Below are positions 10,057 through 25,337 of a stretch of 64,000 nucleotides of DNA, one piece after another (position 1 is the stretch's first letter; each line of letters begins with the position of its first letter). The notes under the pieces are model-generated. The model saw only the letters and a list, made by a program, of their open reading frames with translations. It searched no databases and was not told the DNA's origin. The stretch covers positions 62,001-126,000 of the IMG/VR virus record IMGVR_UViG_3300017917_003143; one strand, given 5' to 3'. The translations under genes were made by a program, and so were the position numbers.

Positions 10057-10260
10057 ATGGCCTACACCGTTTTCAAACACAATCAAAACTATGGTCCTCG
10101 TGCAGGACTAGAAGGTCCGTTCCACTATCCCAATGGGCAGGTCTTGTACTACGATCCCAAGCAGGGCGAGTACTATGACCCACGCACAGACTTCTATGTA
10201 GACCGAGAAGATGTGGCTCTTTTACAACAGAGCATTTTTGACCGGGTTAGTGGGCACTAA
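10057..10260 (+). CDS. Hypothetical phage protein
   Basis: SD ggag; YYDPKQGEYYDP repeat. Confidence 0.6.
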   Translation: MAYTVFKHNQNYGPRAGLEGPFHYPNGQVLYYDPKQGEYYDPRTDFYVDREDVALLQQSIFDRVSGH

Positions 10261-10300
10261 CCTGCGCTGGTTGACCAGAAATATCCATTTCGGTTATAAT
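10245..10300 (+). promoter_or_regulatory. Palindrome + early promoter cassette, copy 1
   Basis: GGTTAGT-gggc-ACTAACC then TTGACC-N18-TATAAT. Confidence 0.85.
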
Positions 10301-10330
10301 ATGGGTATAGTAAGAAATTAGGAGAGCTAG

Positions 10331-10663
10331 ATGAAGCTGATGATCACGACCCAAGTGCAAGAAAACTACGGTGCCCACGATTGGGACGGCACGGGCGATT
10401 GCCCCCAGTACTGGAAGTTCAAAGGTGGCAACGACTACTCGTATGCCCTGGGCAGTCATGTTCGCAATACCGAAGCTCTTGCAGAGTTGGTCCAAGCTCT
10501 CCGTGGCCAGATCGAGTGCGATGACATTGGTTATCGCGAATACATCATAGGTTGGTCTGTGGAGTCGGACGACTATCTCACAGATTTTGAGCAAAGCCAG
10601 CTCGAATACGAAGGTAAGATCACTTACCGTACTCAAGAACTCACTCTCCTGGAGGCCGCATAA
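10331..10663 (+). CDS. Hypothetical early protein
   Basis: Strong SD; ENYGAHDWDG...QYWKFKGG. Confidence 0.65.
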   Translation: MKLMITTQVQENYGAHDWDGTGDCPQYWKFKGGNDYSYALGSHVRNTEALAELVQALRGQIECDDIGYREYIIGWSVESDDYLTDFEQSQLEYEGKITYRTQELTLLEAA

Positions 10664-10938
10664 TGCCCACGATTTCCGAAATCAATCACGCCATCATGCA
10701 AGGCGATCTTACCAACGATCAACTGGACAGCATCATTGCCGCGATCAAGTTCCGTCGCACACAGATCGCTCGCGAAATCAAACGCGAAGTCCGTGTAGGA
10801 GTGGCTGTAAAGTTCTACCATCCCAAATTGGGCATGGACGTCCATGGTACTGTGAATCGGGTGAAGCAGAAGTTCATCCTGGTGGATACCTCCAAAGGTC
10901 GTTACAATGTTCCAGCCAACCTGCTTGAGGTAGCATGA
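10663..10938 (+). CDS. Hypothetical early protein (SH3/KOW-like C-terminus)
   Basis: Translational coupling; GTVNRVKQKFILV. Confidence 0.55.
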   Translation: MPTISEINHAIMQGDLTNDQLDSIIAAIKFRRTQIAREIKREVRVGVAVKFYHPKLGMDVHGTVNRVKQKFILVDTSKGRYNVPANLLEVA

Positions 10939-11168
10939 GGTTAGATCTCAACGAAACCTTGCAATGGATTGGTGCCTTGTTTATCATAGCAGGGCACAGT
11001 CTAAACGCCATTGGTCCAGCGGCCTATCCTTACAATATCGTTACATTTTTCATAGGAACAATAATGTTTCTAATTTGGACCATCCGTGTTGCAAATAAGC
11101 CACAGATGGTTGTAAACCTTGTGGCAGTAGGCATTGGGCTCACAGGACTGGTAAAAGCATTTGGTTGA
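10935..11168 (+). CDS. Small 3-TM membrane protein (PnuC/SemiSWEET-like half transporter?)
   Basis: Three hydrophobic segments; the family call is by resemblance. Confidence 0.45.
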   Translation: MRLDLNETLQWIGALFIIAGHSLNAIGPAAYPYNIVTFFIGTIMFLIWTIRVANKPQMVVNLVAVGIGLTGLVKAFG

Positions 11169-11194
11169 CCAAAAATACCCATTTCGGTTATAAT
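11165..11194 (+). promoter_or_regulatory. Early promoter
   Basis: TTGACC-N18-TATAAT; downstream ggtatagt motif shared with other copies. Confidence 0.8.
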
Positions 11195-11223
11195 ATAGGT
11201 ATAGTGTCAAAAAAGGAGCAGAC

Positions 11224-11487
11224 ATGTACACAGTTGAAGTTTACAAAAAAGACAAGCGCACCAAAACAGGCGAGCGCCTGGTTCGCAAAGTGGATCATAG
11301 TACCGCGGACCGCGGCGCCTTGGAGCATGTGTATAAACACACCTACTTCCCCAGCCATGGATACCGTTTTGAGATCCATGAGACCTATGTGACTCGTCGG
11401 AACTTGATGGGCGGTGCAGAGTACAAAGAACGCTATGACACTCCTTATTTCTGCTCACCCAGTTCCGAATCCTATTGGAGCATGTGA
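11224..11487 (+). CDS. Hypothetical early protein
   Basis: SD aaggag. Confidence 0.6.
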   Translation: MYTVEVYKKDKRTKTGERLVRKVDHSTADRGALEHVYKHTYFPSHGYRFEIHETYVTRRNLMGGAEYKERYDTPYFCSPSSESYWSM

Positions 11488-11882
11488 TGGCTTTGAAAAT
11501 CTATGAAGAGGTCACAGAATGGACGGGTATCGAATATCGAAAACCTAACCATGTGTACCTCATGGATGGTGACAAGGTCTATGGTTACAGTCCCTGGGGA
11601 ACCGAACCTCCACGGTACATGAAGACCTTCTTGCGTATCGACAAGCGCGGTCGCAAGTTCGTTGAGTCCAAACAGAACCAATGGAAATTTGATCTCTCTA
11701 TCCGTACCGAAGAACCCGTGAAAGAACCAGAACCACAAGGACAGGTTTGGACAGTAGCAGGATCAAAAGGTAATCAATATTTCGTCAACCTAAATGCCGG
11801 TCATTGGTCTTGCACTTGCCCTGGGCATGGGTTCCGAGGCCGTTGCCGCCACGTGGACGAGATCGCCAAAACTGTAGCATAA
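11487..11882 (+). CDS. SWIM zinc-finger protein
   Basis: WSCTCPGHGFRGRCRH (CxC...CxH). Confidence 0.8.
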   Translation: MALKIYEEVTEWTGIEYRKPNHVYLMDGDKVYGYSPWGTEPPRYMKTFLRIDKRGRKFVESKQNQWKFDLSIRTEEPVKEPEPQGQVWTVAGSKGNQYFVNLNAGHWSCTCPGHGFRGRCRHVDEIAKTVA

Positions 11883-11992
11883 GGCAAAGTAGATCGCCAA
11901 AAAAGTAGACCTTGCCCGCAAAGTTTGCTATACTAGTCCTACGCTGAAGCAATTATATTGATCGGCGATTTACTTTAAAGGAAAATCATAAA

Positions 11993-12265
11993 ATGATTAC
12001 TCGATTCAACGAAGAAACTAAGACTTACAAACTATTCAACGCTCTCCATTCTGGCGACGTTGTGACTCCTGCTCAGGCACAGAAGCGTTTTGGCATTAAG
12101 AATATTTCTGCCGAAGTTAGCCGCATCCGCCAAGCTGGTTTTGCTGTTTATGCAAACCGTCGTACAGCTGGCAACGGTGTTCAGGTAACTGAATACGTCA
12201 TGGGCAAACCAAGCCGCAAGATCGTGGCCGCTGGTTACAAAGCTCTTGCAATGGGCTTGGTCTAA
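11993..12265 (+). CDS. Winged-helix DNA-binding protein
   Basis: VTPAQAQKRFGIKNISAEVSRIRQAGF pattern; own promoter (TAGACC..TATACT) and terminator. Confidence 0.65.
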   Translation: MITRFNEETKTYKLFNALHSGDVVTPAQAQKRFGIKNISAEVSRIRQAGFAVYANRRTAGNGVQVTEYVMGKPSRKIVAAGYKALAMGLV

Positions 12266-12304
12266 TATAGAGTCCGCTGGTCGCATCAAAACGACCACCT
12301 CTGC

Positions 12305-12330
12305 AAAAAGGCTACTTCGGTAGCCTTTTT
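12305..12330 (+). terminator. Intrinsic terminator with UUCG loop
   Basis: aaaaaggctac-ttcg-gtagccttttt. Confidence 0.9.
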
Positions 12331-12462
12331 CTTTGCCAAAATCAGTTGACAAATTTGTTTTGTTATGTAATAATGTGATTGTGTTTAATACACCGCCCGA
12401 TATCTTTTGATAGTCAGGGTGTATCTAGATTTACGCATTCAAACCTTAAAGGAGAAACGAAT

Positions 12463-13386
12463 ATGCGAACAGTAACAAAAAAACCTTCTATTCCCGCTTC
12501 AGTGGAAAAATTTATTGGTATCGAATGGGGCACCTGGGCGCCCGGTGATAGAATCCCTGTTAATACTCCATTGAGTAAATGCCAACGAGATTACAAAAAA
12601 CAAAACGTCTACAAATATATTACCAAAATTGGCGGTCTTGACAAAAATCTATTTGGGTACGCTACTGCTGTTCGTCGCAAAAGTGATGGAAAACTAGCAC
12701 TAATCAATGGTCAGCATCGAATTCAATTAGTTAAAATTGTTAGTCCTACAACCCAAGAAGTTCCGGCACATATCATTGATGTCGAGGATGCTGACTTTGA
12801 AACATATGGTAGTAAACTATTCCACGAGTTTAATGGAACTGTAAGTAAAGGTTTGAGCAACGAAGAACAATTTTATGCTCAAGTCTTGAGTCAAGATCCT
12901 GAAGCACTTAAAATTAAAAAATTACTTGAGGACTGTGGATTAAGTTGCGGAAAAGTTAATAATGTAAACGGAACGTATCCGGTAGACTATGCTACATTTG
13001 TTAAATGTAGAAAACTTGGAGAATCGTTTACAATTCGTGCCGCCAAGTTACTTACTACCGGGTTTGATACTTGTAATACTGATGTTCTACACGGTCTTGT
13101 ATTTTTGTTTAGCAATCCACACTATTCTGAATTAGCCGACAACACCAAGGCCGTTGGGCAACAATTTGAACACTGGCTCACTGTATTCCTACCTACTTTC
13201 ATTGGGATCAATGATCTTAAATATAAAGACTATCGTCAAGGTGCCTGGCAGAAAGGTGTTGCTTACGGTATTGCCCAGAGCTTTGCTAAACGACAACGAA
13301 ACAATGGCCGGTACGCCCCATCAATTGCTGAAATCAAAGAAATTTGGAAAAAAGGATTTCAAAAGGAAGATAGCGGTATATTATAA
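12463..13386 (+). CDS. ParB/Srx-like DGQHR-type domain protein (NGQHR variant)
   Basis: CQRDY ... LINGQHR; SD aaggag before ATG 12463. Confidence 0.7.
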   Translation: MRTVTKKPSIPASVEKFIGIEWGTWAPGDRIPVNTPLSKCQRDYKKQNVYKYITKIGGLDKNLFGYATAVRRKSDGKLALINGQHRIQLVKIVSPTTQEVPAHIIDVEDADFETYGSKLFHEFNGTVSKGLSNEEQFYAQVLSQDPEALKIKKLLEDCGLSCGKVNNVNGTYPVDYATFVKCRKLGESFTIRAAKLLTTGFDTCNTDVLHGLVFLFSNPHYSELADNTKAVGQQFEHWLTVFLPTFIGINDLKYKDYRQGAWQKGVAYGIAQSFAKRQRNNGRYAPSIAEIKEIWKKGFQKEDSGIL

Positions 13387-13388
13387 AC

Positions 13389-13412
13389 AAAAGGACCCTA
13401 GGGTCCTTTTTT
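13389..13412 (+). terminator. Intrinsic terminator
   Basis: aaaaggaccc-ta-gggtcctttttt. Confidence 0.8.
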
Positions 13413-13436
13413 CTTTAGAATTAGCAAGGATAACTC

Positions 13437-13871
13437 ATGACACCAAATACACATTTGGTGGATCCAGCTGTAAGATCTTGGTTGATGAAATTCTCTGACA
13501 TTGACTACTATGAAGTTAACGAATTTTTAACCGAAGATACAGAACAGCCATTCCACCTACTACTGAACAAAGACATATACGATTATAGATCTCGGGCCAA
13601 GGTGCATCAGATTTTTGAAAAATTTCATGGATCTCCAGTTTACAATGAGCTAGAAACCAAAAAAGGTTTATATGAAGTATTTGTTTTCCCCAACTCTTCT
13701 TTGTGTTGGCAAGCAAGACTGACAATCGGGGACAAATGGACTTATCATGGAATTTACCAGCACACTGAAGACACCATACCAGTTTACAACCCGTCTACAC
13801 GGGAAATAAAACAAGTTCCGGCTAATAAAAGCAAGCTTCATCAGTTACTCAAAAATATCCGTAAGAAGTGA
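13437..13871 (+). CDS. Hypothetical protein
   Basis: SD aagga; ORF track. Confidence 0.55.
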   Translation: MTPNTHLVDPAVRSWLMKFSDIDYYEVNEFLTEDTEQPFHLLLNKDIYDYRSRAKVHQIFEKFHGSPVYNELETKKGLYEVFVFPNSSLCWQARLTIGDKWTYHGIYQHTEDTIPVYNPSTREIKQVPANKSKLHQLLKNIRKK

Positions 13872-13906
13872 TTGACCAGAAAAGACATTTCCTATATAAT
13901 ACTTGT

Positions 13907-14371
13907 ATGCTTAAAAAACTCTTTCAACGCATGGGCCGATATCGTGTTATCATGGATCGGCAAGACAACGAGCCTTATCTGGAGCGGTACTACCTGTTCC
14001 TCAAAGATAGGAAACGGTTCCCGTTCAATGTGTTTTTGCACAAATTCTTAAAAGGAGATCCCGACGATGTACATGATCACCCATGGCCGTATTGTACTTT
14101 CATACTTGCAGGAGGCTACTATGAGTGGGTTCCGCAGTTTGATGCTCAAGGCCGAAAGTCTTGCGAGGTTCGCCATTGGCGTGGGCCCGGACACTTTCGC
14201 ATCTGCGGTGCTAATAGTTATCATCGTATTGAGCTCAAGCCTGGCGTGACTGCCTGGACCTTGTTCATGCCTGGGCCACAGCGCCAAGATTGGGGATTCA
14301 TGTATAATAACAACTGGGTCCAACACGAAGAATATTTCAAACTCAAACGACTTCTCAACTCAAAGGAGTAA
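13907..14371 (+). CDS. Cupin-fold protein
   Basis: HKF...DVHDHPW...GGYYE and YHRIEL; directly after TTGACC..TATAAT-N6-ATG. Confidence 0.7.
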   Translation: MLKKLFQRMGRYRVIMDRQDNEPYLERYYLFLKDRKRFPFNVFLHKFLKGDPDDVHDHPWPYCTFILAGGYYEWVPQFDAQGRKSCEVRHWRGPGHFRICGANSYHRIELKPGVTAWTLFMPGPQRQDWGFMYNNNWVQHEEYFKLKRLLNSKE

Positions 14372-14373
14372 GC

Positions 14374-14919
14374 ATGCCTAATTGGTGTAGTAACACACTC
14401 ACACTCGCCCACGGAGATCCTGCTGAGATCGCTCGTGCCGCAGAAGCCTTCCGACGTGGAGAACTGCTCAACGAGTTTGTTCCTTTGCCCGAAGCTGAAA
14501 AAGACAACTGGTACGATTGGCATGTCTCTAACTGGGGTACCAAATGGGACGTGGGAGGAGACGACTACGGTGAGCCCACAGTGTCTGAAGATGGGCGTAG
14601 CATGAGCGTGAACTTTGATTCAGCCTGGGCACCACCTACTCAATGGTATGAGCGCATGGTGGAAATGGGGTTTGATGTTGATGCTATGTATTACGAATCG
14701 GGCATGGCCTTTGCTGGTAAGTATGTTGACGGCTATGATGATTACTACGAGTTCTCCAACATGACCAGCGCAGAAGTCCGCGACATGTTGCCAGAGGACC
14801 TGGATGAAATGTTTGGCATCACTGAAATGATGGCCGAGTACGAAGACGAAGAACCGCTCACCGAGTGGTATGTGGAAGGTGCCAAGGAAAAAGGATTGAT
14901 CAAAGATGGAAACGACTGA
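14374..14919 (+). CDS. YubB/Api92-like (ferredoxin-like fold) protein
   Basis: MPNWCSN start, WYDWHVSNWGTKWD, FDSAWAPP. Confidence 0.75.
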   Translation: MPNWCSNTLTLAHGDPAEIARAAEAFRRGELLNEFVPLPEAEKDNWYDWHVSNWGTKWDVGGDDYGEPTVSEDGRSMSVNFDSAWAPPTQWYERMVEMGFDVDAMYYESGMAFAGKYVDGYDDYYEFSNMTSAEVRDMLPEDLDEMFGITEMMAEYEDEEPLTEWYVEGAKEKGLIKDGND

Positions 14920-15271
14920 CATTTTATTGTATATTGCTCTGGGCATCTGCATTGGTGTCTGGTTGTTTTACTTCACGCTCAAATTGATCATACGCAGGCT
15001 CTTAGCAAGGATCGAAAATGATCTTGAAGAGGCCTTGGAAAAACACCAGGAAGAAAAGACGATCCCTTGCCGGGTGGAATTGCACAATGCGATGTTTTTC
15101 GTGTATAATAACGAAACCAACGAATTCATGGCACAGGGCAAGGATCTAAAAGAATTGCGTGAGCATATCAAATTTCGGTGGGCCGACAAAAAAGTCAGCG
15201 TGGTCGCTGGCGAAGAAAATGTATTAGACCAACTAAGGGCACAACTAAATGAAAGTAGCAGTAGCCAGTGA
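14906..15271 (+). CDS. Membrane-anchored hypothetical protein
   Basis: N-terminal TM helix. Confidence 0.55.
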   Translation: METTDILLYIALGICIGVWLFYFTLKLIIRRLLARIENDLEEALEKHQEEKTIPCRVELHNAMFFVYNNETNEFMAQGKDLKELREHIKFRWADKKVSVVAGEENVLDQLRAQLNESSSSQ

Positions 15272-16118
15272 CATACACTTGGAGTTTGGAGATCTTGATC
15301 TACCCAATACCGACAGTGCTGATGTCTTGATCCTAAGTGGAGATATCTGTGTGGCCCGTGATATCGGTCGCCCGGATCCCAACAACATCATAGAAGGCGC
15401 CCGTAGCCAACGAGTACGAGACTTCTTCCAGCGTGTGAGTTCTGCGTTCCCGCATGTGGTTTTTGTCATGGGCAATCATGAACATTATCATGGTGACTTT
15501 GCCAAGAGCTACAGCACGATCAAGAACATGCTGGCCGATCATCATCTCCATAATGTGTATCTCTTGGAAAAAGAAACCAAGGAGATTGACGGGTGGATGT
15601 TTATCGGTGGCACACTATGGACCGACTTCAATGGTGGTGATTTACAGACCATGCAACATGCGTCTTGGGGCATGAACGACTACAACGGCATCAAGAACAG
15701 CGACTCTGGTCACGCTCACGGTATCTGGAAATTGATCCCTGAAGCCACACTGAAAGATCACTACAAGATGAAAAGTTATATCCAAACAGTGTTGGCCAAT
15801 CGACGAGCACAAGGTCTGCGTGATCGCCGTGTGGTAGTGGTAGGACATCATGCGCCTAGCAGAGCCAGCACACATCCCAGATATCAACACGATATCCTGA
15901 TGAATGGTTGCTATAGCAGTGCTTTGGACAACATCATGTTGGACAATCCGGAAATCGTGTTATGGACACATGGCCACACTCACGAAGATTTTGACTACAT
16001 GATTGGATCCACTCGTGTGGTCTGTAACCCACGTGGCTATATTGGCTACGAAGACAAGGCAGATCGATGGCAGGCAAAATACATAGATTTGGACAGTATC
16101 TCCGCTATAGCGGAGTAA
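15249..16118 (+). CDS. Calcineurin-like metallophosphoesterase
   Basis: SDIH, SGD, GNHEH, HH, HGHTH motifs. Confidence 0.92.
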   Translation: MKVAVASDIHLEFGDLDLPNTDSADVLILSGDICVARDIGRPDPNNIIEGARSQRVRDFFQRVSSAFPHVVFVMGNHEHYHGDFAKSYSTIKNMLADHHLHNVYLLEKETKEIDGWMFIGGTLWTDFNGGDLQTMQHASWGMNDYNGIKNSDSGHAHGIWKLIPEATLKDHYKMKSYIQTVLANRRAQGLRDRRVVVVGHHAPSRASTHPRYQHDILMNGCYSSALDNIMLDNPEIVLWTHGHTHEDFDYMIGSTRVVCNPRGYIGYEDKADRWQAKYIDLDSISAIAE

Positions 16119-16307
16119 GCATCATCATCTCCTTGAATCCACTTTGGTGGAAAGTGTTGCCTTGGTTTCGAGAAGAAACCACAGCAGAATGGGGATCAGC
16201 TGAACGTACCTATGCCGCTGGATTCTTAGGACTGACTGTCCGGGTTTGGATCGACTCGGGAGATTGGTGATCGTTGACCAGAAATCAATAATAAAGTATA
16301 ATACATA

Positions 16308-16687
16308 ATGAATCAAAAAATCAAAGACCTAATGGCGCAGGCTGGAACAGATGTCAGCGGCAAATGGATGAGTGTTGACCATGCTGAGCGATTTGTTGAC
16401 TTGATGATCAAAGAGTGTTTTGAATATCTTGACGATGATACAGAGCAAAAGATTCGACAACATTTTGGAGTTTATTGATGAATGAACGTTTTAAACAACT
16501 GAGTTTGTTGGCTGGTGGTAGTCATTATCCTTCAATCAATCCTGACATGCAACAGAAATTTGGCGAGTTGATCGTCCAGGAATGTGCTAGGATCGCTGAT
16601 ACTGAACGAGACAATTCTGTAGGTTGCGGGTATATCACCAAGACCAAGGGCATGCTGATCAAAGAATATTTTGGAATCGATCAATGA
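16308..16687 (+). CDS. Two tandem paralogous small ORFs (16308-16478, 16475-16687)
   Basis: Both follow the pattern MN.rIK.L...F.eLi..EC...I..hFG.; promoter TTGACC..TATAAT directly upstream. Confidence 0.6.
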
Positions 16688-18693: not shown

Positions 18694-19140
18694 ATGAAAC
18701 TGTACTTTGCCTACGGCGCAAATCTCAGCAGAGACAGCATGTCACACCGTTGTCCTCAAGCCAGACCCTTCCAGAGTTTCTATTTGCGGGGATGGGAACT
18801 GGGTTTTGCTACCCATGCCACTATCCGACCCAATCCAGGAAAAGTCGTTCCCGGGGCCTTGTGGCGCATCACTGACGACTGCGAGTGGAACCTTGACTCA
18901 TTCGAAGGCTATCCCAAATACTACGGTAAACGCATACTTGAACAAGACGGTTATGAGTTCATGGTCTATGTCATGAACAATCCTCAATATGGGACCACTT
19001 ACGAATCCTATGTTGACCTAATACATGCCGGGTATCAGGATTGGAACCTTGATTCGGCTCCTCTTTGGGACGCGGTTGACCAGATACAACTTCCTGTGTA
19101 TAATGATAAAGAATGGCAATACTCCACAGCAATCTCCTAG
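18694..19140 (+). CDS. Gamma-glutamylcyclotransferase (GGCT/AIG2-like)
   Basis: LYFAYGANL start, LDSFEGYP. Confidence 0.85.
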   Translation: MKLYFAYGANLSRDSMSHRCPQARPFQSFYLRGWELGFATHATIRPNPGKVVPGALWRITDDCEWNLDSFEGYPKYYGKRILEQDGYEFMVYVMNNPQYGTTYESYVDLIHAGYQDWNLDSAPLWDAVDQIQLPVYNDKEWQYSTAIS

Positions 19141-19376
19141 ACGAAGCTTTTAAAAAGCAGATAAACTGGAGAGACAAAGACAGTTTTGCTTATGCCTTGG
19201 AGATTCGCAAACCATTTGGTGCGTTGGACGAAGTACTGAAATGGTGCAAAGGCGAACTGCAAAATGATTGGCGGTGGCAGATGGTGGAGATGGCCAACGA
19301 TAGGAATCCTGGAAGGTACATTTTTTACTTTGATTCTGAACAGGATTATTTTGCGTGTTTTTTGAAATGGAGTTAA
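19113..19376 (+). CDS. Hypothetical protein
   Basis: Preceded by TTGACC(19076)-N17-TATAAT(19099). Confidence 0.55.
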   Translation: MAILHSNLLDEAFKKQINWRDKDSFAYALEIRKPFGALDEVLKWCKGELQNDWRWQMVEMANDRNPGRYIFYFDSEQDYFACFLKWS

Positions 19377-19378
19377 AG

Positions 19379-19645
19379 ATGAGCGTATCAAATATCAAAG
19401 GATTTTTGTCTTGGCAGTTCCAAGGAACTTTCAAGAATCCAAGTTTTTACGGCATGATGATCAGTGTCTTGGGTCTTGTGGCCGCCGCGGCAGGATGCCC
19501 GGCACCGTGGCCTATGATCATGAACATCGGTGGTGTGGTCATTGTCATGGCTGACTTGACTTACTCCTGGATCAAGTGGAGTTATCAACTGTATCGCATG
19601 GAACAAGATCGCATCGTGCGTGAACTGGCAAGAAAAGAACAATGA
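19379..19645 (+). CDS. 2-TM membrane protein
   Basis: Two hydrophobic helices. Confidence 0.55.
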   Translation: MSVSNIKGFLSWQFQGTFKNPSFYGMMISVLGLVAAAAGCPAPWPMIMNIGGVVIVMADLTYSWIKWSYQLYRMEQDRIVRELARKEQ

Positions 19646-19777
19646 AGTATCTACAGTACATCTTAGTGGCCACTATCACCCTCAACATATTCTTGTTCTG
19701 GGGAACTGATGCAGTGTATGGTTGGGTGGTAGCATTGGCAGGTTGGGTACCACACTTATTTGACAGGAAAGCGAATC

Positions 19778-20812
19778 ATGGCAACTAAAAAAGAAAAACA
19801 AGACCTCATCAACACATTGAAGTTTACACCACGTACCTATCGTGTTGAGTTGGGTGCTTATGGCGGAGAAGTTTATTGCGGTCGTGTGGATCGTAAAATT
19901 TATGACTACTTCAAAAGTCGTAGCATCGACTTGGATGAGTTCGCATCTGACTGGGACAACGAATTAGAAGTTCCTGACGACATGCAACCATTTCCACCAG
20001 GTAGTCCCTATGAATGCGATGGCTTGCTACATGCCAGTGGTGCTACCATGGACAGTGGTAACTATATCACTGTGTACGATGAAAATGGCGAAGAAGTTTG
20101 GCAACACAGTTTAGATCTTGATGCTCTTGATGACAGTGAAATCCCTGTCAACGAATGGGAAGTATTCACGCTGGATGAGCTTAAAGAAGGTGAAGTAGCT
20201 TACTGGGGAGCCCAAGGCGAGAAAGGTCTGTGCTACGGTGGCGAGTTTGAACTCAAAGAACCTTTTGATCCCAAGAAGTTTTGTCTAAACTTTAGTAATG
20301 CCGATGGCTGGTATATCTGCAATGGCGTGAGCTACGACGGCGAAGATATCGACAACAACGATTTAAGTACCACAGGCAAGTGGGGCGAGAATAAGTGGCT
20401 TATCGGCGGTGACGAAGAACCATATGATCCAGCAGATGCTGTGCCCGAGGGCGAGGAAAATGGCGGTGCCGGATGGCCTGCTAGTTACTACCCTGATGAA
20501 AGCGAAGAAGTAGAGTTCAAGTTCAAAAAACACAAGCCCGTGCATGTGGGTTGGTACACTGTGAACTGGGGATACGGCAGTACCTATGGCAAACTGTACT
20601 GGAACGGCACAGAGTTTGTGGACTTTGAGTACAACAAAGAACAGAGCATTGACCAAGAAGGTGTCGTGACCTGGAAGGGTCTCAACTGGGACACATCAGA
20701 TTGGGCCAACTGCCCACAGCCCAAAGAAGTAGAGGAAGACTGGGATCCAGCGGCCGAGCTGGAAAAGATCTCTGTGCCTGAATCAGACACTAAAAAATCC
20801 TGGCCCTTTTAA
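19778..20812 (+). CDS. Acidic hypothetical protein
   Basis: SD agga; very Asp/Glu-rich. Confidence 0.6.
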   Translation: MATKKEKQDLINTLKFTPRTYRVELGAYGGEVYCGRVDRKIYDYFKSRSIDLDEFASDWDNELEVPDDMQPFPPGSPYECDGLLHASGATMDSGNYITVYDENGEEVWQHSLDLDALDDSEIPVNEWEVFTLDELKEGEVAYWGAQGEKGLCYGGEFELKEPFDPKKFCLNFSNADGWYICNGVSYDGEDIDNNDLSTTGKWGENKWLIGGDEEPYDPADAVPEGEENGGAGWPASYYPDESEEVEFKFKKHKPVHVGWYTVNWGYGSTYGKLYWNGTEFVDFEYNKEQSIDQEGVVTWKGLNWDTSDWANCPQPKEVEEDWDPAAELEKISVPESDTKKSWPF

Positions 20813-20866
20813 GTTAGTACCCACTAACTTAGTGGGGTTGACAGAAAATCTTTTTTCTGTTATACT
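20811..20866 (+). promoter_or_regulatory. Palindrome + early promoter cassette, copy 2
   Basis: AAGTTAGT-accc-ACTAACTT then TTGACA-N17-TATACT. Confidence 0.85.
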
Positions 20867-20961
20867 GTAGGAACTTGATAAAATTCTAACTCGAGCATGG
20901 TGCTCATAGAGAGTTTTATCGGTAGATGCATGGTGCATCGTTACAACCCAAGGAGAATCAA

Positions 20962-22005
20962 ATGGCAAAACGCCTCACACGTAAACTCACGGATGTTGCT
21001 CGTGAAGTTGAATCCACACTCAAAACCCACTACGGGGTAACTCAAAAAGAACTCAATGCTTGGCGGCAGGCCGCACAGAGTTCCCCGCATTCGTTTCCTG
21101 CGAGCCACATGGTCACGATCGACGATCTATACATCGACTATGAGGTCCAGCGTGATGTCATCCATGATCACGTCAAAAACATCATGAAGAAATGGGATCC
21201 ACGTATTTGTAGTCCTGTTTCTGCTTGCCAGTTGGTTGGCAAATCTACTATTGATACCTATGATGGACAGCACCGTACCATCGCCGCTACCATTCTTGGG
21301 TACACAGAACTTCCCGGTGCAGTGGTAACGACCACAGATCCTCAATTTGCCAGCCTGGCATTTGAAATGCTCAATGATACTGGTGTCCGTCATTTGACAC
21401 CTGGTGATAAACATCGCAACGCATTGGTTCGCTACAAACTTGGCAGTCGTGATATCAAGAACGTTCGTGCCCGTACCATGCAAGATCAATTTGATGCACT
21501 AGAAATTGACTTGCAAGACAAAGGCTCTCGCAACAGTCCTACTCTGCGTGGTGACCATGACTACTTCTTTAGTCATTTTAAGTATGCACAAAAAGGCATC
21601 GACCTTGATCCCAAAGGACAGGTATTGTTTGACATCCTCAAAGCCATCAAAGAAACGTTTCCCATTCAAGAAGAAATTGATCAAGGTGTGTTTATTGGAC
21701 TGTATGAGTTACAACGCCTAGCAGGTGAATACAATGTCAAGCTACCGCAGGGCTGGATGAAAACATTGTTGGAAAGCATCAAACCTATTTTCAAAGGATC
21801 CAAGCTCATCCACGACAAAGCCAAGACACAGTGGGAACACAAGAATCCGGGTGCCACCTGGAGTGCGCCCAGTGCTATGAGCAATTTCATGCGTGAGTTG
21901 CATATCTTGTCTGGTGGCAGTCTACAGTTACCAACTCACGGTCCTGGTGCCAGCATGGGCATCACTGCTGGAAATGTAGTACCTGGCCTGTTTCCGGAGG
22001 CTTGA
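20962..22005 (+). CDS. DGQHR-domain (ParB/Srx superfamily; DndB/DUF262-like) protein
   Basis: YEVQRDV ... TYDGQHRT; SD aaggag. Confidence 0.8.
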   Translation: MAKRLTRKLTDVAREVESTLKTHYGVTQKELNAWRQAAQSSPHSFPASHMVTIDDLYIDYEVQRDVIHDHVKNIMKKWDPRICSPVSACQLVGKSTIDTYDGQHRTIAATILGYTELPGAVVTTTDPQFASLAFEMLNDTGVRHLTPGDKHRNALVRYKLGSRDIKNVRARTMQDQFDALEIDLQDKGSRNSPTLRGDHDYFFSHFKYAQKGIDLDPKGQVLFDILKAIKETFPIQEEIDQGVFIGLYELQRLAGEYNVKLPQGWMKTLLESIKPIFKGSKLIHDKAKTQWEHKNPGATWSAPSAMSNFMRELHILSGGSLQLPTHGPGASMGITAGNVVPGLFPEA

Positions 22006-22006
22006 T

Positions 22007-22564
22007 ATGTTGAAAGAAAGTTTAGAAAAATTCACACCTCCGGTGTATGGTCGGACCAAGCGAAACGCCAACACCTACAAGACAGTGGCAAATCGTTGCA
22101 CTCGCAATCTTAAACGATTGGTGGAGGAATACAATACCACACACAATGACGCTCAGGAGTTGCGTGAAATACGCAACGAAATTGATGACTTCTTGCGCCG
22201 GTATCATGAATACTGCATCAAGCAACGAGACAACATGGATGCTCACTATCACGAGCAAGGTTCAGAAGAAGACACTGACTTTGAACATTTGATTCCGGCC
22301 GCTCGTATCCGTGATCTATTGTTGGCTGGAGTGATCACGGTTGAGCAGGCACTGAATGCACCTACGGTGAAGCTGAGTCGTAGCAAACACATGGCACTCA
22401 AAGACGCCGGGTGGGCCAGCCACACACCTGACATGTGGTTGCCATTCCGTAGATATAGCCAAGTGTTTGATGCTGACTTTACCACGTTTGATGGTACTGT
22501 GATAGATCCTGAAACGTGGACTCTGGAACGGCATTTTGACTATTTTAAGCATCTTGTGCTGTAA
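22007..22564 (+). CDS. Putative HNH/His-Me finger nuclease (GmrD/DUF1524-like)
   Basis: DFEHLIP ... LNAPTVKLSRSKH. Confidence 0.6.
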   Translation: MLKESLEKFTPPVYGRTKRNANTYKTVANRCTRNLKRLVEEYNTTHNDAQELREIRNEIDDFLRRYHEYCIKQRDNMDAHYHEQGSEEDTDFEHLIPAARIRDLLLAGVITVEQALNAPTVKLSRSKHMALKDAGWASHTPDMWLPFRRYSQVFDADFTTFDGTVIDPETWTLERHFDYFKHLVL

Positions 22565-22627
22565 GTTAGTGGATACTAACCTAGTAAAATACTAGGGGTT
22601 GACCAGAAAACCCATTTTGGTTATAAT
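22564..22627 (+). promoter_or_regulatory. Palindrome + early promoter cassette, copy 3
   Basis: AGTTAGT-ggat-ACTAACC, a second dyad CCTAGT-aaaat-ACTAGG, then TTGACC-N17-TATAAT. Confidence 0.85.
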
Positions 22628-22660
22628 ACTTGTATTGAAACTGCAAAAAGGACTCGCAAC

Positions 22661-23116
22661 ATGGCTACTCGTTCTGTAATTGGTGTGATGCATGGTGATG
22701 TGTGCAAGGCTGTTTACTGCCACTGGGATGGTTACATTGATCACAATGGTACGATTCTTCAAGAGCACTACGATTCGGTCAAAGCCAATCATCTTGTTAG
22801 CCTAGGAGACATTTCCAGCCTAGGACCCGAAATTGGCGAGAAGCATGCCTTCAGCCAGTTTGATACTAAGATGTCCTCAGAGGAATACGACAAGCTCTAC
22901 GGCAACATGACCACATTCTACGGTCGTGATCGTGGCGAAGAAGGCACTGACTACAAGGTGTTTCATTCCTATGATGCTTTCGTGGACTTCTTCAACGGAT
23001 GTGGTGCAGAGTATGCTTACATCATGAATCAAGGCGTATGGTATGTCAAGCAATACAGCGGCGATCTTGAGATTCTTGCCGACGTGCTGGCAAAACAGCA
23101 GGTTAGTGCGGACTAA
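22661..23116 (+). CDS. Hypothetical early protein
   Basis: MATRS.IG...VYCHWDGY. Confidence 0.65.
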   Translation: MATRSVIGVMHGDVCKAVYCHWDGYIDHNGTILQEHYDSVKANHLVSLGDISSLGPEIGEKHAFSQFDTKMSSEEYDKLYGNMTTFYGRDRGEEGTDYKVFHSYDAFVDFFNGCGAEYAYIMNQGVWYVKQYSGDLEILADVLAKQQVSAD

Positions 23117-23165
23117 CTTAGTGCAAAATAAGAGGTTGACCGAAAACCCCATTTTCGGCTATAAT
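23101..23165 (+). promoter_or_regulatory. Palindrome + early promoter cassette, copy 4
   Basis: GGTTAGT-gcgg-ACTAACT, then TTGACC-N18-TATAAT. Confidence 0.85.
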
Positions 23166-23196
23166 ATTACAAATAGTTAAGAAAAAGGAGTTAGAA

Positions 23197-23463
23197 ATGG
23201 AAGTTCAAGTCAAAGACATCATTCGTGCGTATGATTTCAAACCAATGGTAGGTCGCGAAGACTGCTACCTTGAAGGTGAAGTTTTGGACCGCAATGACAA
23301 TACCATGGGCTTCCAGGCTTACCGGGTTCGCGTGACCAAAGACGTTTGGGGTGGCGAAAACCTCAAAGGCGGTCAAGGTGTGCGTGTGGGTCAGATCATG
23401 TTTGTTCCTTGGAGAACTAGTTTTGGTGATTTCCAAGGCCGTGTCATCAATCTTTCTAGATAA
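23197..23463 (+). CDS. Hypothetical early protein
   Basis: SD aaggag. Confidence 0.6.
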   Translation: MEVQVKDIIRAYDFKPMVGREDCYLEGEVLDRNDNTMGFQAYRVRVTKDVWGGENLKGGQGVRVGQIMFVPWRTSFGDFQGRVINLSR

Positions 23464-23473
23464 GGAGCAGAAG

Positions 23474-23818
23474 ATGGAATTCACTCAAGATCAAATCAAT
23501 GCTATCGTGGCCGAAGCCAAACAAGAAGCTCGCGAAGCCGCAGACAAATTTTTCCAAGAGAAACTTGGTGGGCAAGATCAGTTTGCCTGTGGCTTTGCCT
23601 GGGTTGACATCTACGGTGTCAAAGGCAATACCAAGTTGGGCAAAATGCTCAAGGCCGCTGGTGTTGATCGCAGTGACTACAAGAAGTGTTTCTCAATCTG
23701 GAATCCCAGCGAGCATGGTGCCCAGAACGTTGACACCAAAGAAGCTGGTGCTTACGCGGCCCAGAAGGTGTTTGAGAAATATGGTTTCCGTGCATACGCA
23801 GGTAGCCGACTCGATTAA
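23474..23818 (+). CDS. Hypothetical early protein
   Basis: SD aaggag; ACGFAWV motif. Confidence 0.65.
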   Translation: MEFTQDQINAIVAEAKQEAREAADKFFQEKLGGQDQFACGFAWVDIYGVKGNTKLGKMLKAAGVDRSDYKKCFSIWNPSEHGAQNVDTKEAGAYAAQKVFEKYGFRAYAGSRLD

Positions 23819-24135
23819 GGCTGTAATGGGCAGGTGCCTGCCTTGGGGAGCCTTGATACCCCAGAAACTTGCAGTCTATTTTTACTGGTTATAGACTCTA
23901 AAGAAAAACCAGTAATTTTTAACAAGGAGCAGGTATGAAATTAGATGACATCAAATCTGACATCGCTAAGAGCGAAACCTCTGTACTCAAACAGCGTTTT
24001 GAACTGTATCGCGATCTCCGTAGCATGGGTATCACTGACATCATTGTCCGAGACTTGCTGGAACTTGAACTAGCACGTCGTGGCGTGTTTGAAGATCTTG
24101 GCCCTTATAGCACCATTAACAGTTAAGGAATTTCC

Positions 24136-24567
24136 ATGCCTTGCAGACACTACGAAAGCGATGATTGGGGAGTCAGTAGCTCTGCTCCTAAAATCAAAGC
24201 AGAACTAGATAAGATGGCTCGCATCGCGTGTGCGGCCATGGAAGAACTCGTTGAACAAGGTCGAGCAGATTTTCTAGTTATTAAAAACGAAGAAGTTCGA
24301 GAATGGTGGGAAGCCCATGTGGCCGCTGATCGAGCAGAAAAAGCTCGTGTCGCTGAACAAGAACGCCGAGAGCGAATCAAAGCCGATGCACTTGCACGTC
24401 TAAGCGACGAAGAAAAAGAATTGCTCGGGTTGGCCAAACCCAAGGCCAAGAAGCATTCTAAAAAAATCGGCACTCCAGTTCCTGTAACGGTGGTGGTTAA
24501 CGAAGAAGTAGATGCTCTGGAAGAGTTATTCCACGAAGCAATTAAGTTTGGAAAACATCGTGAGTGA
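24136..24567 (+). CDS. Hypothetical coiled-coil protein
   Basis: SD aagga; MPCRHY start. Confidence 0.55.
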   Translation: MPCRHYESDDWGVSSSAPKIKAELDKMARIACAAMEELVEQGRADFLVIKNEEVREWWEAHVAADRAEKARVAEQERRERIKADALARLSDEEKELLGLAKPKAKKHSKKIGTPVPVTVVVNEEVDALEELFHEAIKFGKHRE

Positions 24568-24895
24568 TCATCAGTTTGTTGCTGTGTGGGATTGCTATGG
24601 GCTGGAGTATATTGGCGATGTTACCATGGCCGAGCAAGACCGTACCTGGGCGGCACTCCAAGGCAAGGCGCCCACATTGACTATTCCAAATCTCTTGCAT
24701 CTTGAGCTAAGAGCACGTTATAATAGTCAACGGCATTATGAGATATATATTTTTAATGCCCAGGAAGGCATCACTGCCGATGACATCCGAGAGATGTTCG
24801 AAGCAGATCCGCAGGTGGCCGCTGACACTATCCGGCGTATCGGACACAAGTTCTACAGCGACCGTAGAGAGGAACATTCGATAAAAATCAGATAA
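24560..24895 (+). CDS. Hypothetical protein
   Basis: GTG start overlapping the previous gene. Confidence 0.55.
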   Translation: MSDHQFVAVWDCYGLEYIGDVTMAEQDRTWAALQGKAPTLTIPNLLHLELRARYNSQRHYEIYIFNAQEGITADDIREMFEADPQVAADTIRRIGHKFYSDRREEHSIKIR

Positions 24896-25250
24896 GGAAG
24901 GAGAATTATGCAAGTCAAAGAAGGCACCCGTTGGTCCAGTAGTGATGGTAATGTATTTCATGTCATGAACGTGGTTGAAGTCGATGGCCACACTTGGGTA
25001 CACTACGAGCAGGACAATGTGCCCGAATCTCGGACCTTTTCTTGTTGGGTTGAAAGTTTTGTTGGCCGTTTTTCTCCTATCCTAAATGAAAGTCGTAAAT
25101 GAAACGCACTGATTTCCGACGTTGGTTGCACGAGCTCTGGCTCCGCAACTGTGATGAACGCACAGAGTATCACGAACTGCCTTATACCCAGCAGGAGTAT
25201 TTCCGGCAGTACAAATACTGGCTCAAACGTGAATTTCGCCACCAAAACAA

Positions 25251-25305
25251 GGTTAGTAAGCACTAACCCAAACGGTTGACCAGAAATACCCATTTCTGCT
25301 ATAAT
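25251..25305 (+). promoter_or_regulatory. Palindrome + early promoter cassette, copy 5
   Basis: GGTTAGT-aagc-ACTAACC then TTGACC-N18-TATAAT; near-identical to copy 1. Confidence 0.85.
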
Positions 25306-25337
25306 ATAGGTATAGTAAGAAATTAGGAGCCAGATTC

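What the first reader, a model, noticed from the sequence alone, without database searches (positions are those of the whole stretch)
10245..25305. Five cassettes pairing a conserved RGTTAGT-N4-ACTAACY palindrome with a strong early promoter, in fixed helical phase
Seen: the palindrome occurs at 10245, 20811, 22564, 23101 and 25251 with invariant arms and variable 4-nt loops. Each copy overlaps or abuts the stop codon of the upstream gene and precedes a TTGACY-N17/18-TATAMT promoter. Dyad centres lie 17.5, 17.5 and 16.5 nt, or 26.5 and 26.5 nt, upstream of the -35 hexamer, i.e. two classes about one helical turn apart. The far class (copies 3, 4) carries an extra TAGT/ACTA half-site in the gap. 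Inference: either a binding site for a dimeric phage regulator acting on the same DNA face as RNA polymerase (candidates: wHTH 11993..12265, AbrB-like 29087..29269), or a mobile promoter-stem-loop cassette analogous to the PeSL elements of T4-type phages that shuffle accessory genes.
Basis: partly seen in the sequence, partly recalled or inferred. Interest (0 to 1): 0.8.

Follow-up and report, generated by a model that had tools for sequence, protein, structure and literature searches.

The report
Palindromic operator on phage early promoters
An uncultured pond jumbo phage places an invariant 18-bp palindrome about five or six DNA turns upstream of the start sites of some strong early promoters; it looks like a docking site for a still-unidentified dimeric regulator, built into portable promoter cassettes at which related phages have swapped genes.

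Summary
RGTTAGT-N4-ACTAACY occurs five times in the window and never in 100 shuffles. Each copy touches the upstream stop codon and precedes a near-consensus sigma-70 promoter. The window is part of a 343-kb IMG/VR jumbo phage distantly related to Pseudomonas phage PA5oct.

The same palindrome-plus-promoter unit occurs in more than 120 IMG/VR stretches. In 596 Gb of cellular genomes it appears once, on a mis-binned phage-like contig.

Across about 150 unique copies:
- The arms are invariant and the centre varies.
- Arm changes are mostly one-sided, not compensatory.
- Dyad centres cluster at -51.5/-52.5 and -61.5 from the inferred start, with a minor group near -70.

The phage uses ordinary GC-rich, T-tailed terminators elsewhere.

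I read the palindrome as an operator for a dimeric DNA-binding protein acting beside RNA polymerase. It sits inside PeSL-like cassettes whose promoters coincide with homology breakpoints between relatives.

The palindrome is optional: about 9 of 14 strong promoters here lack it. In relatives it marks mainly a leaderless GIY-YIG gene and a ParB-like operon.

The binder is unknown. Candidates are the ParB/KorB-like protein, the winged-helix protein, or a host factor. An RNA hairpin or attenuator role is not excluded.

The parts
10245..10262 (.). Palindrome copy 1 (near class). Dyad centre is at -53.5. The right-arm TAA is the stop codon of ORF 10057-10260.
10271..10300 (+). Promoter 1: TTGACC, 18-bp spacer, TATAAT. 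Inferred +1 is at 10307. It drives gene 10331-10663.
20812..20829 (.). Palindrome copy 2 (near class). Dyad centre is at -52.5. It abuts the stop of ORF 19778-20812 and is followed by an extra TTAGTG.
20838..20866 (+). Promoter 2: TTGACA, 17-bp spacer, TATACT with an extended -10 TG. Inferred +1 is at 20873. An 89-nt structured leader precedes the ParB-like gene.
20962..22005 (+). ParB/KorB/Noc-like protein of 347 aa, a candidate binder. It carries the motifs IDYEVQRD and YDGQHRTIAA.
22007..22564 (+). Conserved partner gene that always follows the ParB-like gene. Function unknown.
22564..22581 (.). Palindrome copy 3 (far class). Dyad centre is at -61.5. It abuts the stop of ORF 22007-22564. 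A second small palindrome (CCTAGTA-N3-TACTAGG) follows at 22580-22596.
22599..22627 (+). Promoter 3: TTGACC, 17-bp spacer, TATAAT. Inferred +1 is at 22634. It drives gene 22661-23116.
23101..23118 (.). Palindrome copy 4 (far class). Dyad centre is at -62.5. The right-arm TAA is the stop codon of ORF 22661-23116.
23136..23165 (+). Promoter 4: TTGACC, 18-bp spacer, TATAAT. Inferred +1 is at 23172. It drives gene 23197-23463.
25251..25268 (.). Palindrome copy 5 (near class). Dyad centre is at -52.5. The right-arm TAA is the stop codon of ORF 25099-25266. Orthologous copies in relatives L063 and L118 are in the far class.
25276..25305 (+). Promoter 5: TTGACC, 18-bp spacer, TATAAT with an extended -10 TG. 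Inferred +1 is at 25312. It drives gene 25338-26030.
11993..12265 (+). It is conserved in relatives but has no tested link to the site.
29072..29269 (+). AbrB/MazE-like small protein, matched below the Pfam cut-off.

Best explanation
Proposed mechanism. The palindrome is a dyad-symmetric operator read as double-stranded DNA by a dimeric sequence-specific protein. The half-site is about (CTAG)GTTAGTR, and the two TTAGT cores lie one helical turn apart. The site sits on the upstream face of host-RNA-polymerase early promoters, centred at about -52, at about -61.5, and more rarely near -70. A bound dimer there can touch the polymerase alpha C-terminal domains or sigma region 4. It would set apart a subset of early promoters for separate control.

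Direction of control. The promoters are already near-consensus and often have an extended -10. I therefore think shut-off or damping is somewhat more likely than activation, roughly 60:40.

Wider unit. Stop codon, palindrome, promoter and Shine-Dalgarno or leaderless start together form a PeSL-like portable expression cassette. The repeated promoter part of that cassette also serves as a homology patch where related phages exchange gene modules.

Shown versus inferred.
- Shown: sequence conservation pattern, spacing, distribution, and breakpoints.
- Inferred: that a protein binds, which protein it is, and the sign of regulation.
For: Real and phage-specific:
- Five copies against none in 100 shuffles.
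- More than 120 IMG/VR stretches carry palindrome plus GGTTGAC.
- 596 Gb of cellular genomes give 4 hits, of which only one is a true cassette, on a 4.6-kb MAG contig.

Operator-like conservation:
- In 2.0 Mb of clade loci there are 151 exact copies.
- About 50 copies have a one-sided arm change. Pair 3-14, for example, shows A.A 10, T.T 5, T.G 5 and no compensated pair.
- About 7 changes are compensated, mostly at the loop-closing pair.
- The central 4 nt vary, with a roughly mirror-symmetric R-S-S-Y preference. The flanks extend the dyad (cTAG / yTAG), with Watson-Crick counts equal to expectation.
- Internal control: a hairpin in the ParB-like gene's leader in the same loci shows 26 different covarying stems.

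Coupling to the promoter:
- In protein-anchored, unbiased loci, 23 of 27 exact copies lie within 100 nt upstream of a promoter. In the window it is 5 of 5.
- The gap to -35 is bimodal at 6-9 and 16-19 nt (chi-square p = 2e-50 against uniform over the searched 6-26 range).
- Centres peak at -61.5 (40 of 148) and -51.5/-52.5 (37), with a minor group at -68.5 to -72.5.
- Orthologous cassette 5 switches between the two classes: window and L117 are near, L063 and L118 are far.

Not the phage's terminator type:
- No T-run follows any of the five stems, and the hairpins are modest.
- Canonical terminators exist at about 12305-12335, 13389-13416, 26945-26965 and 27642-27668.

Subset marking:
- About half of the strong promoters in palindrome-selected loci lack the palindrome, and 97 of 104 lack it in ParB-anchored loci.
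- It sits upstream of 56% of GIY-YIG genes.
- It accounts for all 7 palindrome-bearing promoters in ParB-like-anchored loci.
Against: - No binding protein is identified and no experiment or transcript data exist. No RNA run was listed.
- In relatives the same position upstream of the GIY-YIG promoter is filled by other hairpins, including canonical terminators. This fits a structural, PeSL-type stem-loop role.
- The far-class spacer is semi-conserved (mean pairwise identity 0.47, consensus YTAGYGGTTT..GCGG). The two spacing classes could therefore be two inherited cassette types rather than a selected helical phase.
- Tandem double palindromes upstream of GIY-YIG genes are reverse complements of each other, including their asymmetric positions. 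That would also allow a long hairpin or cruciform.
- The sequences are related, so counts are not independent.
Confidence: 0.5

Rival explanations
1. The palindrome acts as RNA. It would be the PeSL-type stem-loop at the 3' end of the upstream gene, acting as an attenuator, terminator or 3'-end-stabilising hairpin. This would insulate each cassette from read-through transcription.
For: - Every copy touches the upstream stop codon.
- Each copy can fold into a 7-10 bp hairpin.
- In T4-type PeSLs a stem-loop in exactly this place was shown to terminate transcription (PMC2839356; PMC4122927).
- In relatives the same slot upstream of the GIY-YIG promoter holds other hairpins or canonical terminators.
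- T.G, which is wobble-compatible on the + strand, is among the tolerated changes.
Against: - No U-tract follows the stem in any window copy.
- The phage has ordinary terminators elsewhere.
- The arms are invariant in sequence, and changes are predominantly non-pairing (A.A, T.T, C.A) with almost no compensation. A true RNA hairpin in the same loci covaries freely.
- The loop is variable.
- Distance to the downstream promoter is quantised, which an element serving the upstream gene does not need.
- Several GIY-YIG loci already carry a separate hairpin upstream of the palindrome.
Confidence: 0.2
2. Sub-hypothesis on the binder. The ParB/KorB/Noc-like protein encoded at 20962-22005 loads at the palindromes, which would be parS/OB-like 16-bp sites. 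It would silence the adjacent promoters, including its own, in the way KorB acts on plasmid RK2.
For: - The AF2 model has pLDDT 88.8.
- All top PDB matches are ParB-family N-terminal plus DNA-binding domains (Noc, KorB, ParB, Spo0J), with Z up to 9 over residues about 46-260.
- AFDB cluster matches are ParB/Srx, ParB/RepB/Spo0J and Noc.
- The motif GQHRTIA fits the GxxRxxA pattern.
- Four of the five window sites lie within 4.5 kb around this gene.
- In 79 protein-anchored loci, all 7 palindrome-bearing promoters are this gene's own promoter.
- KorB's OB is a 16-bp site lying 4-10 bp upstream of -35 when proximal (PMC11790492). The near class here lies 6-9 bp upstream.
Against: - Only about 14% of family members have the site upstream.
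- Alleles only 15-21% identical to each other (L118, L016, L114, L054, L070, L135), with few invariant residues in the putative DNA-binding domain, sit beside the identical palindrome.
- The close relative L118 swapped in an 18%-identical allele and kept the same four sites.
- The arginine of the GxxRxxA-like motif is lost in the divergent alleles.
- There are no Pfam or NCBIfam hits.
- GIY-YIG genes carry the site more often.
Confidence: 0.15
3. Sub-hypothesis on the binder. A conserved host factor, for example a CRP/FNR-family dimer, recognises TTAGT-N4-ACTAA and acts from class-I-like positions.
For: - The 5-4-5 geometry and the positions at -61.5 and about -71.5 match class I CRP/FNR sites. 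The link to that family rests on general knowledge and was not tested here.
- A T-rich stretch lies between the site and -35 in many far-class cassettes.
- The arms are identical across phage lineages whose proteins have diverged to 15-40% identity and whose promoters differ in flavour, for example L076/L087. A slowly evolving host protein explains this most easily.
Against: - The equally common -51.5/-52.5 class is not a classical class I position.
- No factor with this half-site is known to me.
- The host is unknown.
- The promoter-coupled motif is absent from 596 Gb of cellular genomes, although host sites need not sit next to GGTTGACC.
Confidence: 0.15
4. The palindrome itself is the recombination or mobility site: a recombinase or nuclease target, or a cruciform, that moves promoter-gene cassettes. 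This would be analogous to a site-specific version of PeSL shuffling.
For: - Against its closest relative L118, homology ends at 20864 (the -10 of cassette 2) and resumes at 22593 (the -35 of cassette 3). The intervening genes are replaced by an 18%-identical allele plus other sequence.
- Junctions carrying the palindrome are broken in 64 of 69 comparisons, against about 72% for other junctions.
- The commonest downstream gene is a GIY-YIG nuclease.
- Relatives' contigs join the cassette-5 leader to another gene's start.
Against: - Homology breakpoints are enriched at promoter cassettes in general (13 of 80 inside, against 4.9 expected, p = 0.002). Those without a palindrome are hit as often: 7 at 9 cassettes against 6 at 5.
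- Breakpoints fall in the promoter, not in the palindrome.
- There are no flanking target duplications and no paired ends.
- The GIY-YIG and ParB-like genes are conserved at 70% or more across hundreds of contigs, like core genes rather than sporadic homing genes.
- Quantised promoter spacing is unexplained by this model.
Confidence: 0.08

Closest known systems
PeSL (promoter-early stem-loop) cassettes of T4-type phages (Arbiol et al. 2010, PMC2839356; Comeau et al. 2014, PMC4122927)
   Same: - Same order of parts: upstream stop codon, stem-loop, sometimes an AT- or T-rich stretch, a near-consensus sigma-70 promoter, then a Shine-Dalgarno site and ATG.
- Repeated many times among small early genes of unknown function.
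- Cassettes coincide with insertion, deletion and replacement boundaries between relatives.
   Different: - PeSL stems are G/C-run or terminator-like, differ between phage groups, and were shown to terminate transcription. Here the arms are one fixed A/T-rich sequence across very divergent phages, lack a U-tract, do not covary, and keep a quantised distance to -35.
- The palindrome is optional, and palindrome-free promoters are breakpoints equally often.
- The phage is a PA5oct-related jumbo phage, not a T4-type phage in the strict sense.
- Mini-circles were not tested.
KorB-OB operators of IncP plasmid RK2 (PMC11790492)
   Same: - A 16-bp palindromic site reiterated upstream of many sigma-70 promoters of one replicon.
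- The proximal class lies a few bp upstream of -35.
- One site sits at the regulator gene's own promoter.
- A ParB-fold protein is encoded next to the sites.
   Different: - The sequence differs (TTTAGC-type against GTTAGT-N4-ACTAAC).
- No distal sites (45 bp to 1 kb) are evident.
- No KorA-like partner was identified.
- Binding is untested.
- Highly divergent ParB-like alleles accompany the same site, which argues against a cognate pair.
Class I CRP/FNR-type activator sites
   Same: - A dyad-symmetric site with two 5-bp cores.
- The main position is exactly -61.5, with a minor group near -71.
- Room for the alpha C-terminal domain between the site and -35.
   Different: - Half the copies are at about -52.
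- The promoters are already near-consensus.
- No cognate factor is known.
- The comparison rests on geometry alone.
Rho-independent terminators
   Same: A hairpin-forming inverted repeat at the 3' end of a gene.
   Different: The stem is A/T-rich and no T-run follows it. The sequence is invariant where terminators covary. The phage's own terminators look canonical and different.

Membership tests
PeSL cassette | Strong sigma-70-like early promoter with a Shine-Dalgarno site and start codon at the 3' end | tested here: met
   The hexamers are TTGACC or TTGACA, 17-18 bp apart from TATAAT or TATACT. Leaders are 24-27 nt (89 nt for copy 2) and carry GGAG. This rests on sequence only; promoter activity was not measured.
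PeSL cassette | Stem-loop immediately upstream of -35, at the end of the upstream gene | tested here: met
   A 7-bp stem with a 4-nt loop lies 6-9 or 16-19 nt from -35 and overlaps the stop codon.
PeSL cassette | The stem-loop is an effective transcription terminator or attenuator | not testable with these tools
   No RNA run was listed. The sequence argues against it: no U-tract, invariant arms and no covariation.
PeSL cassette | Located in hyperplastic regions and associated with indels or replacements between close relatives | tested here: met
   Against L118, one module swap is bounded by cassettes 2 and 3. Of 80 breakpoints, 13 fall inside promoter cassettes against 4.9 expected. Palindrome-free cassettes are affected equally.
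PeSL cassette | Mini-circles formed by recombination between neighbouring cassettes | not testable with these tools
   Only assembler contigs of the source metagenome were available. They show cassette-level mosaicism in relatives but no circles.
ParB-parS / KorB-OB system | A ParB-family protein (N-terminal ParB/Srx domain plus helix-turn-helix DNA-binding domain) is encoded | tested here: met
   The AF2 model has pLDDT 88.8. ParB, KorB and Noc match at Z 8-9 over residues 46-260, and AFDB clusters agree. No sequence-family hit was found.
ParB-parS / KorB-OB system | Palindromic sites of about 16 bp clustered near the parB-like gene | tested here: met
   Four of five sites lie within 4.5 kb around 20962-22005, and the same holds in L118. 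In other relatives there is usually at most one site, at the gene's own promoter.
ParB-parS / KorB-OB system | Protein and site co-vary as a cognate pair | tested here: not met
   Alleles only 15-21% identical accompany the identical palindrome. 86% of family members have no site upstream.
ParB-parS / KorB-OB system | Specific binding and CTP-dependent clamping | not testable with these tools
   Only a GxxRxxA-like pattern (GQHRTIA) is seen, and it is not conserved in the divergent alleles.
Rho-independent terminator | GC-rich stem followed directly by a T-run | tested here: not met
   The stems are A/T-rich and the tails are CTGCGCTGG, TTAGTGGGG, CTAGTAAAA, TTAGTGCAA and CAAACGG. The scanner finds canonical terminators elsewhere.
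Class I CRP/FNR-type site | Dyad site centred near -61.5, -71.5 or -82.5 on one helical face | tested here: inconclusive
   Peaks lie at -61.5 and at about -70, but an equally large peak lies at -51.5/-52.5. The +1 is inferred, not mapped.
Class I CRP/FNR-type site | A cognate CRP/FNR-family protein exists | not tested
   The host is unknown. No such protein was found among the window proteins scanned.

The most novel reading that the evidence does not exclude
An abundant clade of uncultured jumbo phages runs a KorB-like silencing circuit. A phage ParB-fold protein, possibly with its invariably adjacent partner gene, would load at parS-like 16-bp palindromes placed one fixed helical face upstream of selected early promoters. 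It would switch those promoters off on schedule, including its own promoter and that of an early GIY-YIG nuclease. This would be the first ParB-type transcriptional silencing system described in a lytic phage.
Probability: 0.15. Interest if true: 0.8.

Novelty: new variant of a known kind. Interest (0 to 1): 0.6.

Why it matters
Jumbo phages that lack their own RNA polymerase must time hundreds of genes using the host enzyme, and almost nothing is known about how they do it.

This element gives a concrete, testable handle:
- It is a short invariant DNA site that marks a subset of early promoters.
- It occurs across more than a hundred environmental phage contigs.
- Its spacing rules are strict enough to suggest direct contact with RNA polymerase.

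Finding the binder would reveal a regulator that is conserved across a large uncultured phage clade or its hosts.

The cassettes also extend the PeSL idea of portable, self-contained expression units that make gene swapping safe. Until now that idea applied to T4-type phages; here it applies to a different jumbo-phage lineage.

These cassettes could also serve as compact, insulated promoter parts.

Tried and rejected
- **Isolated phage records.** megablast and blastn of 20-26 kb against 50,697 phage records gave no match. A tblastn of the clamp loader placed the phage nearest to PA5oct at 55.6% identity. PA5oct's first 50 kb has only two such promoters and no palindrome. The PA5oct paper's promoter and terminator tables are not held.
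- **Literature search by motif letters.** It returned only noise.
- **Autoregulated ParB-like gene.** In palindrome-selected loci the site always preceded this gene. That was partly selection bias: in protein-anchored loci only about 14% have it.
- **Inverted repeat in the promoter spacer (CAGAAAT-N4-ATTTCTG).** I considered it as a second operator or hairpin. Across 239 promoters it is a conserved A-tract, CCC, T-tract, TG pattern. Its stem potential is barely above shuffles (3.7 against 3.0 pairs).
- **Partner gene 22007-22564 as an HNH / GmrSD-C nuclease.** Only weak language-model leads (scores 0.72-0.74) and an EH..IP..N motif support this. A confident model found no fold match. This reading is left open.
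- **The palindrome alone in IMG/VR.** Most new hits are unrelated: coding coincidences, or arrays in other phage types. They say nothing about this clade.
- **Transcript evidence.** No RNA run was listed. DNA contigs of the source pond run show only repeat-like depth spikes and mosaic relatives.
- **Rfam.** No family matched in the window.
- **Integron attC, MITE and CIRCE/parS sequence resemblances.** I considered these from memory and dropped them because the sequence or architecture does not fit.

Full report
**1.

The pattern RGTTAGT-N4-ACTAACY occurs at 10245, 20812, 22564, 23101 and 25251. It occurs in none of 100 dinucleotide-preserving shuffles. Allowing two mismatches adds only one weak, promoter-less site at 19662.

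Each copy is followed by GG-TTGACC or GG-TTGACA, a 17-18 bp spacer and TATAAT or TATACT.

Taking +1 as the 7th base after the -10, the centres lie at -53.5, -52.5, -61.5, -62.5 and -52.5. This choice of +1 is supported by several leaderless genes whose ATG starts exactly there.

The upstream ORFs stop either at the TAA inside the right arm (10260, 23116, 25266) or at a TAA abutting the left arm (20812, 22564).

The pairing is not obligatory. Nine other promoters of the same strength and consensus in 10-31 kb have no palindrome.

**2. What genome this is**

The window equals positions of about 62-126 kb of IMGVR_UViG_3300017917_003143, a 343,632-bp contig. A pond metagenome holds it.

No isolated phage matches at the DNA level. 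By clamp-loader protein the nearest isolate is Pseudomonas jumbo phage PA5oct (55.6%). Next come other Rak2/Atu_ph07-type jumbo phages.

PA5oct depends on host RNA polymerase and has TTGAC / TATAATA promoters (PMC7318152). Its first 50 kb does not contain this cassette.

The stretch from 10 to 33 kb is a one-strand array of small early genes. Downstream lie tail-fibre-like and replication genes.

**3. The element is widespread and phage-specific**

Many belong to contigs of 190-357 kb.

The same pattern with one more base finds only four places in 596 Gb of bacterial and archaeal genomes. Three are chance look-alikes. One is a true cassette on a 4.6-kb contig of a MAG, probably mis-binned.

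In loci fetched through proteins, and therefore unbiased for the motif, 23 of 27 exact palindromes lie within 100 nt upstream of a promoter.

The bare palindrome also occurs in unrelated viral contigs. There it appears as coding coincidences or as arrays in other phage types, which is a separate matter.

**4. The conservation pattern is that of a protein-read DNA site, not a structure-only hairpin**

In 2.0 Mb of clade loci there are 151 unique exact copies.
- About 50 copies are changed on one arm only. At pair 3-14, for example, the counts are A.A 10, T.T 5, T.G 5 and no compensated pair.
- About 7 changes are compensated, mostly at the loop-closing pair.
- The central four bases vary, with a roughly mirror-symmetric R-S-S-Y preference.
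- The flanks extend the dyad (cTAG on the left, yTAG on the right). Watson-Crick pair counts there equal those expected from independent columns.

As an internal control, the leader of the ParB-like gene in the same loci carries a hairpin of the form NNNN-CA-TKG-TG-N'N'N'N', with 26 different complementary stems. That is how a selected RNA helix looks in these genomes.

The palindrome's hairpins are modest and none is followed by a T-run. The phage has canonical GC-rich, T-tailed terminators at about 12305, 13389, 26945 and 27642.

**5. Coupling to the promoter**

- 38 cassettes at 6-9 nt
- 55 cassettes at 16-19 nt, of which 38 are at exactly 18
- very few in between

The chi-square p-value is 2e-50, with the caveat that the sequences are related.

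Expressed from the inferred +1, 148 sites peak at -61.5 (40 sites) and at -51.5/-52.5 (37 sites). A minor group lies at -68.5 to -72.5.

The orthologous cassette upstream of the 25338 gene is near-class in the window and in L117. It is far-class in L063 and L118, a 10-bp switch.

Against a pure helical-phase argument, the far-class spacer is semi-conserved (mean pairwise identity 0.47). The two classes may therefore be two inherited cassette types.

**6. Which promoters carry it**

Downstream genes fall into more than 50 families. Two families stand out.

- **Leaderless GIY-YIG protein.** This protein of about 113 aa starts with an ATG 6 nt after the -10 (Pfam GIY-YIG). It follows 28 of 121 cassettes. 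In 59 GIY-YIG-anchored loci, 56% have the palindrome or a variant with 1-2 mismatches upstream. The rest have other hairpins or canonical terminators in that slot.
- **A ParB-like gene and its constant partner.** In 79 ParB-like-anchored loci only 7 of 104 strong promoters carry the palindrome, and all 7 are that gene's own promoter. Even so, only about 14% of family members have it.

The window's lineage, together with L118, L063 and L117, has extra copies on neighbouring promoters. The palindrome therefore behaves as an optional regulatory module that marks a subset of early promoters.

**7. Candidate binders**

- **The winged-helix protein (11993-12265).** It matches HTH_39 at E = 2e-7. The 29072-29269 ORF is a sub-threshold AbrB/MazE match. 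Nothing links either to the site.
- **The protein at 20962-22005.** It has no Pfam or NCBIfam hit, yet it models confidently (pLDDT 88.8). It matches ParB, KorB, Noc and Spo0J over the N-terminal and DNA-binding domains, and AFDB clusters agree.
  - It sits amid four of the five sites.
  - KorB's OB is likewise a 16-bp site, 4-10 bp upstream of -35 when proximal (PMC11790492).
  - Against it, alleles only 15-21% identical accompany the identical palindrome. L118 kept its four sites after swapping in such an allele.
- **A host factor.** The identity of the arms across very divergent phages would be explained most simply by a conserved host factor. The 5-4-5 geometry and the -61.5 position recall CRP/FNR class I sites. 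That comparison rests on general knowledge, and the -52 class does not fit it.

**8. The PeSL comparison**

The architecture matches PeSLs of T4-type phages: stem-loop, sigma-70 promoter, Shine-Dalgarno site and ATG, set in hyperplastic regions.

Against the closest relative L118, DNA homology ends at 20864, which is the -10 of cassette 2. It resumes at 22593, which is the -35 of cassette 3. The genes in between are replaced, in part by an 18%-identical allele of the same ParB-like family.

Over all relatives, 13 of 80 homology breakpoints fall inside promoter cassettes, against 4.9 expected (p = 0.002). Cassettes without a palindrome are hit as often: 7 at 9 cassettes, against 6 at 5.

Gene adjacency is broken in 64 of 69 comparisons at palindrome junctions. 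It is broken in about 72% of comparisons elsewhere.

Contigs of relatives in public runs join one cassette's leader to another gene. Word depth spikes at the cassettes.

The repeated promoter therefore acts as the linker. The palindrome is an add-on with a different role.

**9. Verdict**

Best reading (about 0.5): the palindrome is an operator for an unidentified dimeric DNA-binding protein, placed on a fixed face upstream of selected host-polymerase early promoters, inside PeSL-like portable cassettes.

An RNA attenuator or stabiliser role (about 0.2) is not excluded and needs transcript-end data.

I rate it as a new variant of known kinds: PeSL cassettes and upstream operators.

Noticed in passing
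window 13907, 16308, 26522, 30836; L077:6250-6591: Several early genes are leaderless. Their ATG begins 6 nt after the -10 hexamer, at the inferred transcription start. The GIY-YIG family in relatives is always arranged this way: 28 of 28, with an offset of 6-7 nt.
   Followed up: partly
window 20893-20905 and 20925-20939 (leader of gene 20962-22005): Two hairpins of the form NNNN-CA-TKG-TG-N'N'N'N' lie in the 89-nt leader of the ParB-like gene. In 43 of 71 relatives the same hairpin occurs, with 26 different complementary stems. This is a covarying RNA element, possibly a translational operator or processing site. No Rfam family matches it.
   Followed up: partly
window 20962-22005 and 22007-22564: This is a conserved two-gene unit, adjacent in about 90 fetched loci. 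The first gene is a ParB/KorB/Noc-fold protein with more than 1000 metagenomic homologues, all unnamed. The second is a 185-aa partner with invariant AHYHE, FEHLIP and N motifs. The partner models at pLDDT 92 but has no fold match, and there are only weak hints that it is an HNH-type nuclease.
   Followed up: partly
all strong promoters, e.g. window 10271-10300, 11165-11194, 25276-25305: The promoter spacer itself is conserved: TTGACC, A-tract, nCCC, T-tract, TGn, TATAAT. This adds an extended -10 and gives the look of an inverted repeat. Stem potential is barely above shuffled controls.
   Followed up: yes
relatives L360, L335, L338, L322, L337 (upstream of GIY-YIG genes): Some relatives carry two palindromes in tandem that are reverse complements of each other, including their asymmetric positions and loops. 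Together they could form a long inverted repeat of about 18 bp per arm.
   Followed up: partly
L148:3086-3207; L183, L194, L199, L213, L179, L123, L153: Unrelated viral contigs carry arrays of the same GTTAGT-N4-ACTAAC palindrome with no promoter attached. One example is five tandem 26-bp repeats. These look like iteron or centromere-type binding-site clusters in other phage groups.
   Followed up: no
window 28019-28207: A small protein matches the histone H1-like Hc1 family (E = 3e-13). It is 85-95% identical in relatives, suggesting a phage-encoded nucleoid-type DNA-binding protein.
   Followed up: no
window 7506-8816, 54677-55801, 59118-61388, 29637-30476, 28219-28887, 30478-30804: The window carries several auxiliary genes: two radical-SAM proteins (one with a SPASM domain), a ClpB/ClpA-like double-AAA ATPase, an NAD synthase, a Bax-inhibitor-1 membrane protein and a 7Fe-type ferredoxin.
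   Followed up: no
L228:6801, L230:6385, L237:6912: The exact palindrome also occurs inside coding sequence in the one reading frame without stop codons, where it encodes the peptide ELVLTNL. It may be a coincidence of a conserved peptide or an internal site.
   Followed up: no
window 20801-21000 and 25201-25400: In contigs from the source pond run and from one other run, word depth at the cassettes is 4-7 times that of the flanks. This is as expected for a sequence repeated within and between co-occurring related phages.
   Followed up: partly
L380 (DITO01000251.1, 4.6 kb): A complete cassette with the typical leader sits on a short contig binned into an Erysipelotrichaceae MAG. This is probably a mis-binned phage fragment and is not evidence for the host.
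   Followed up: no
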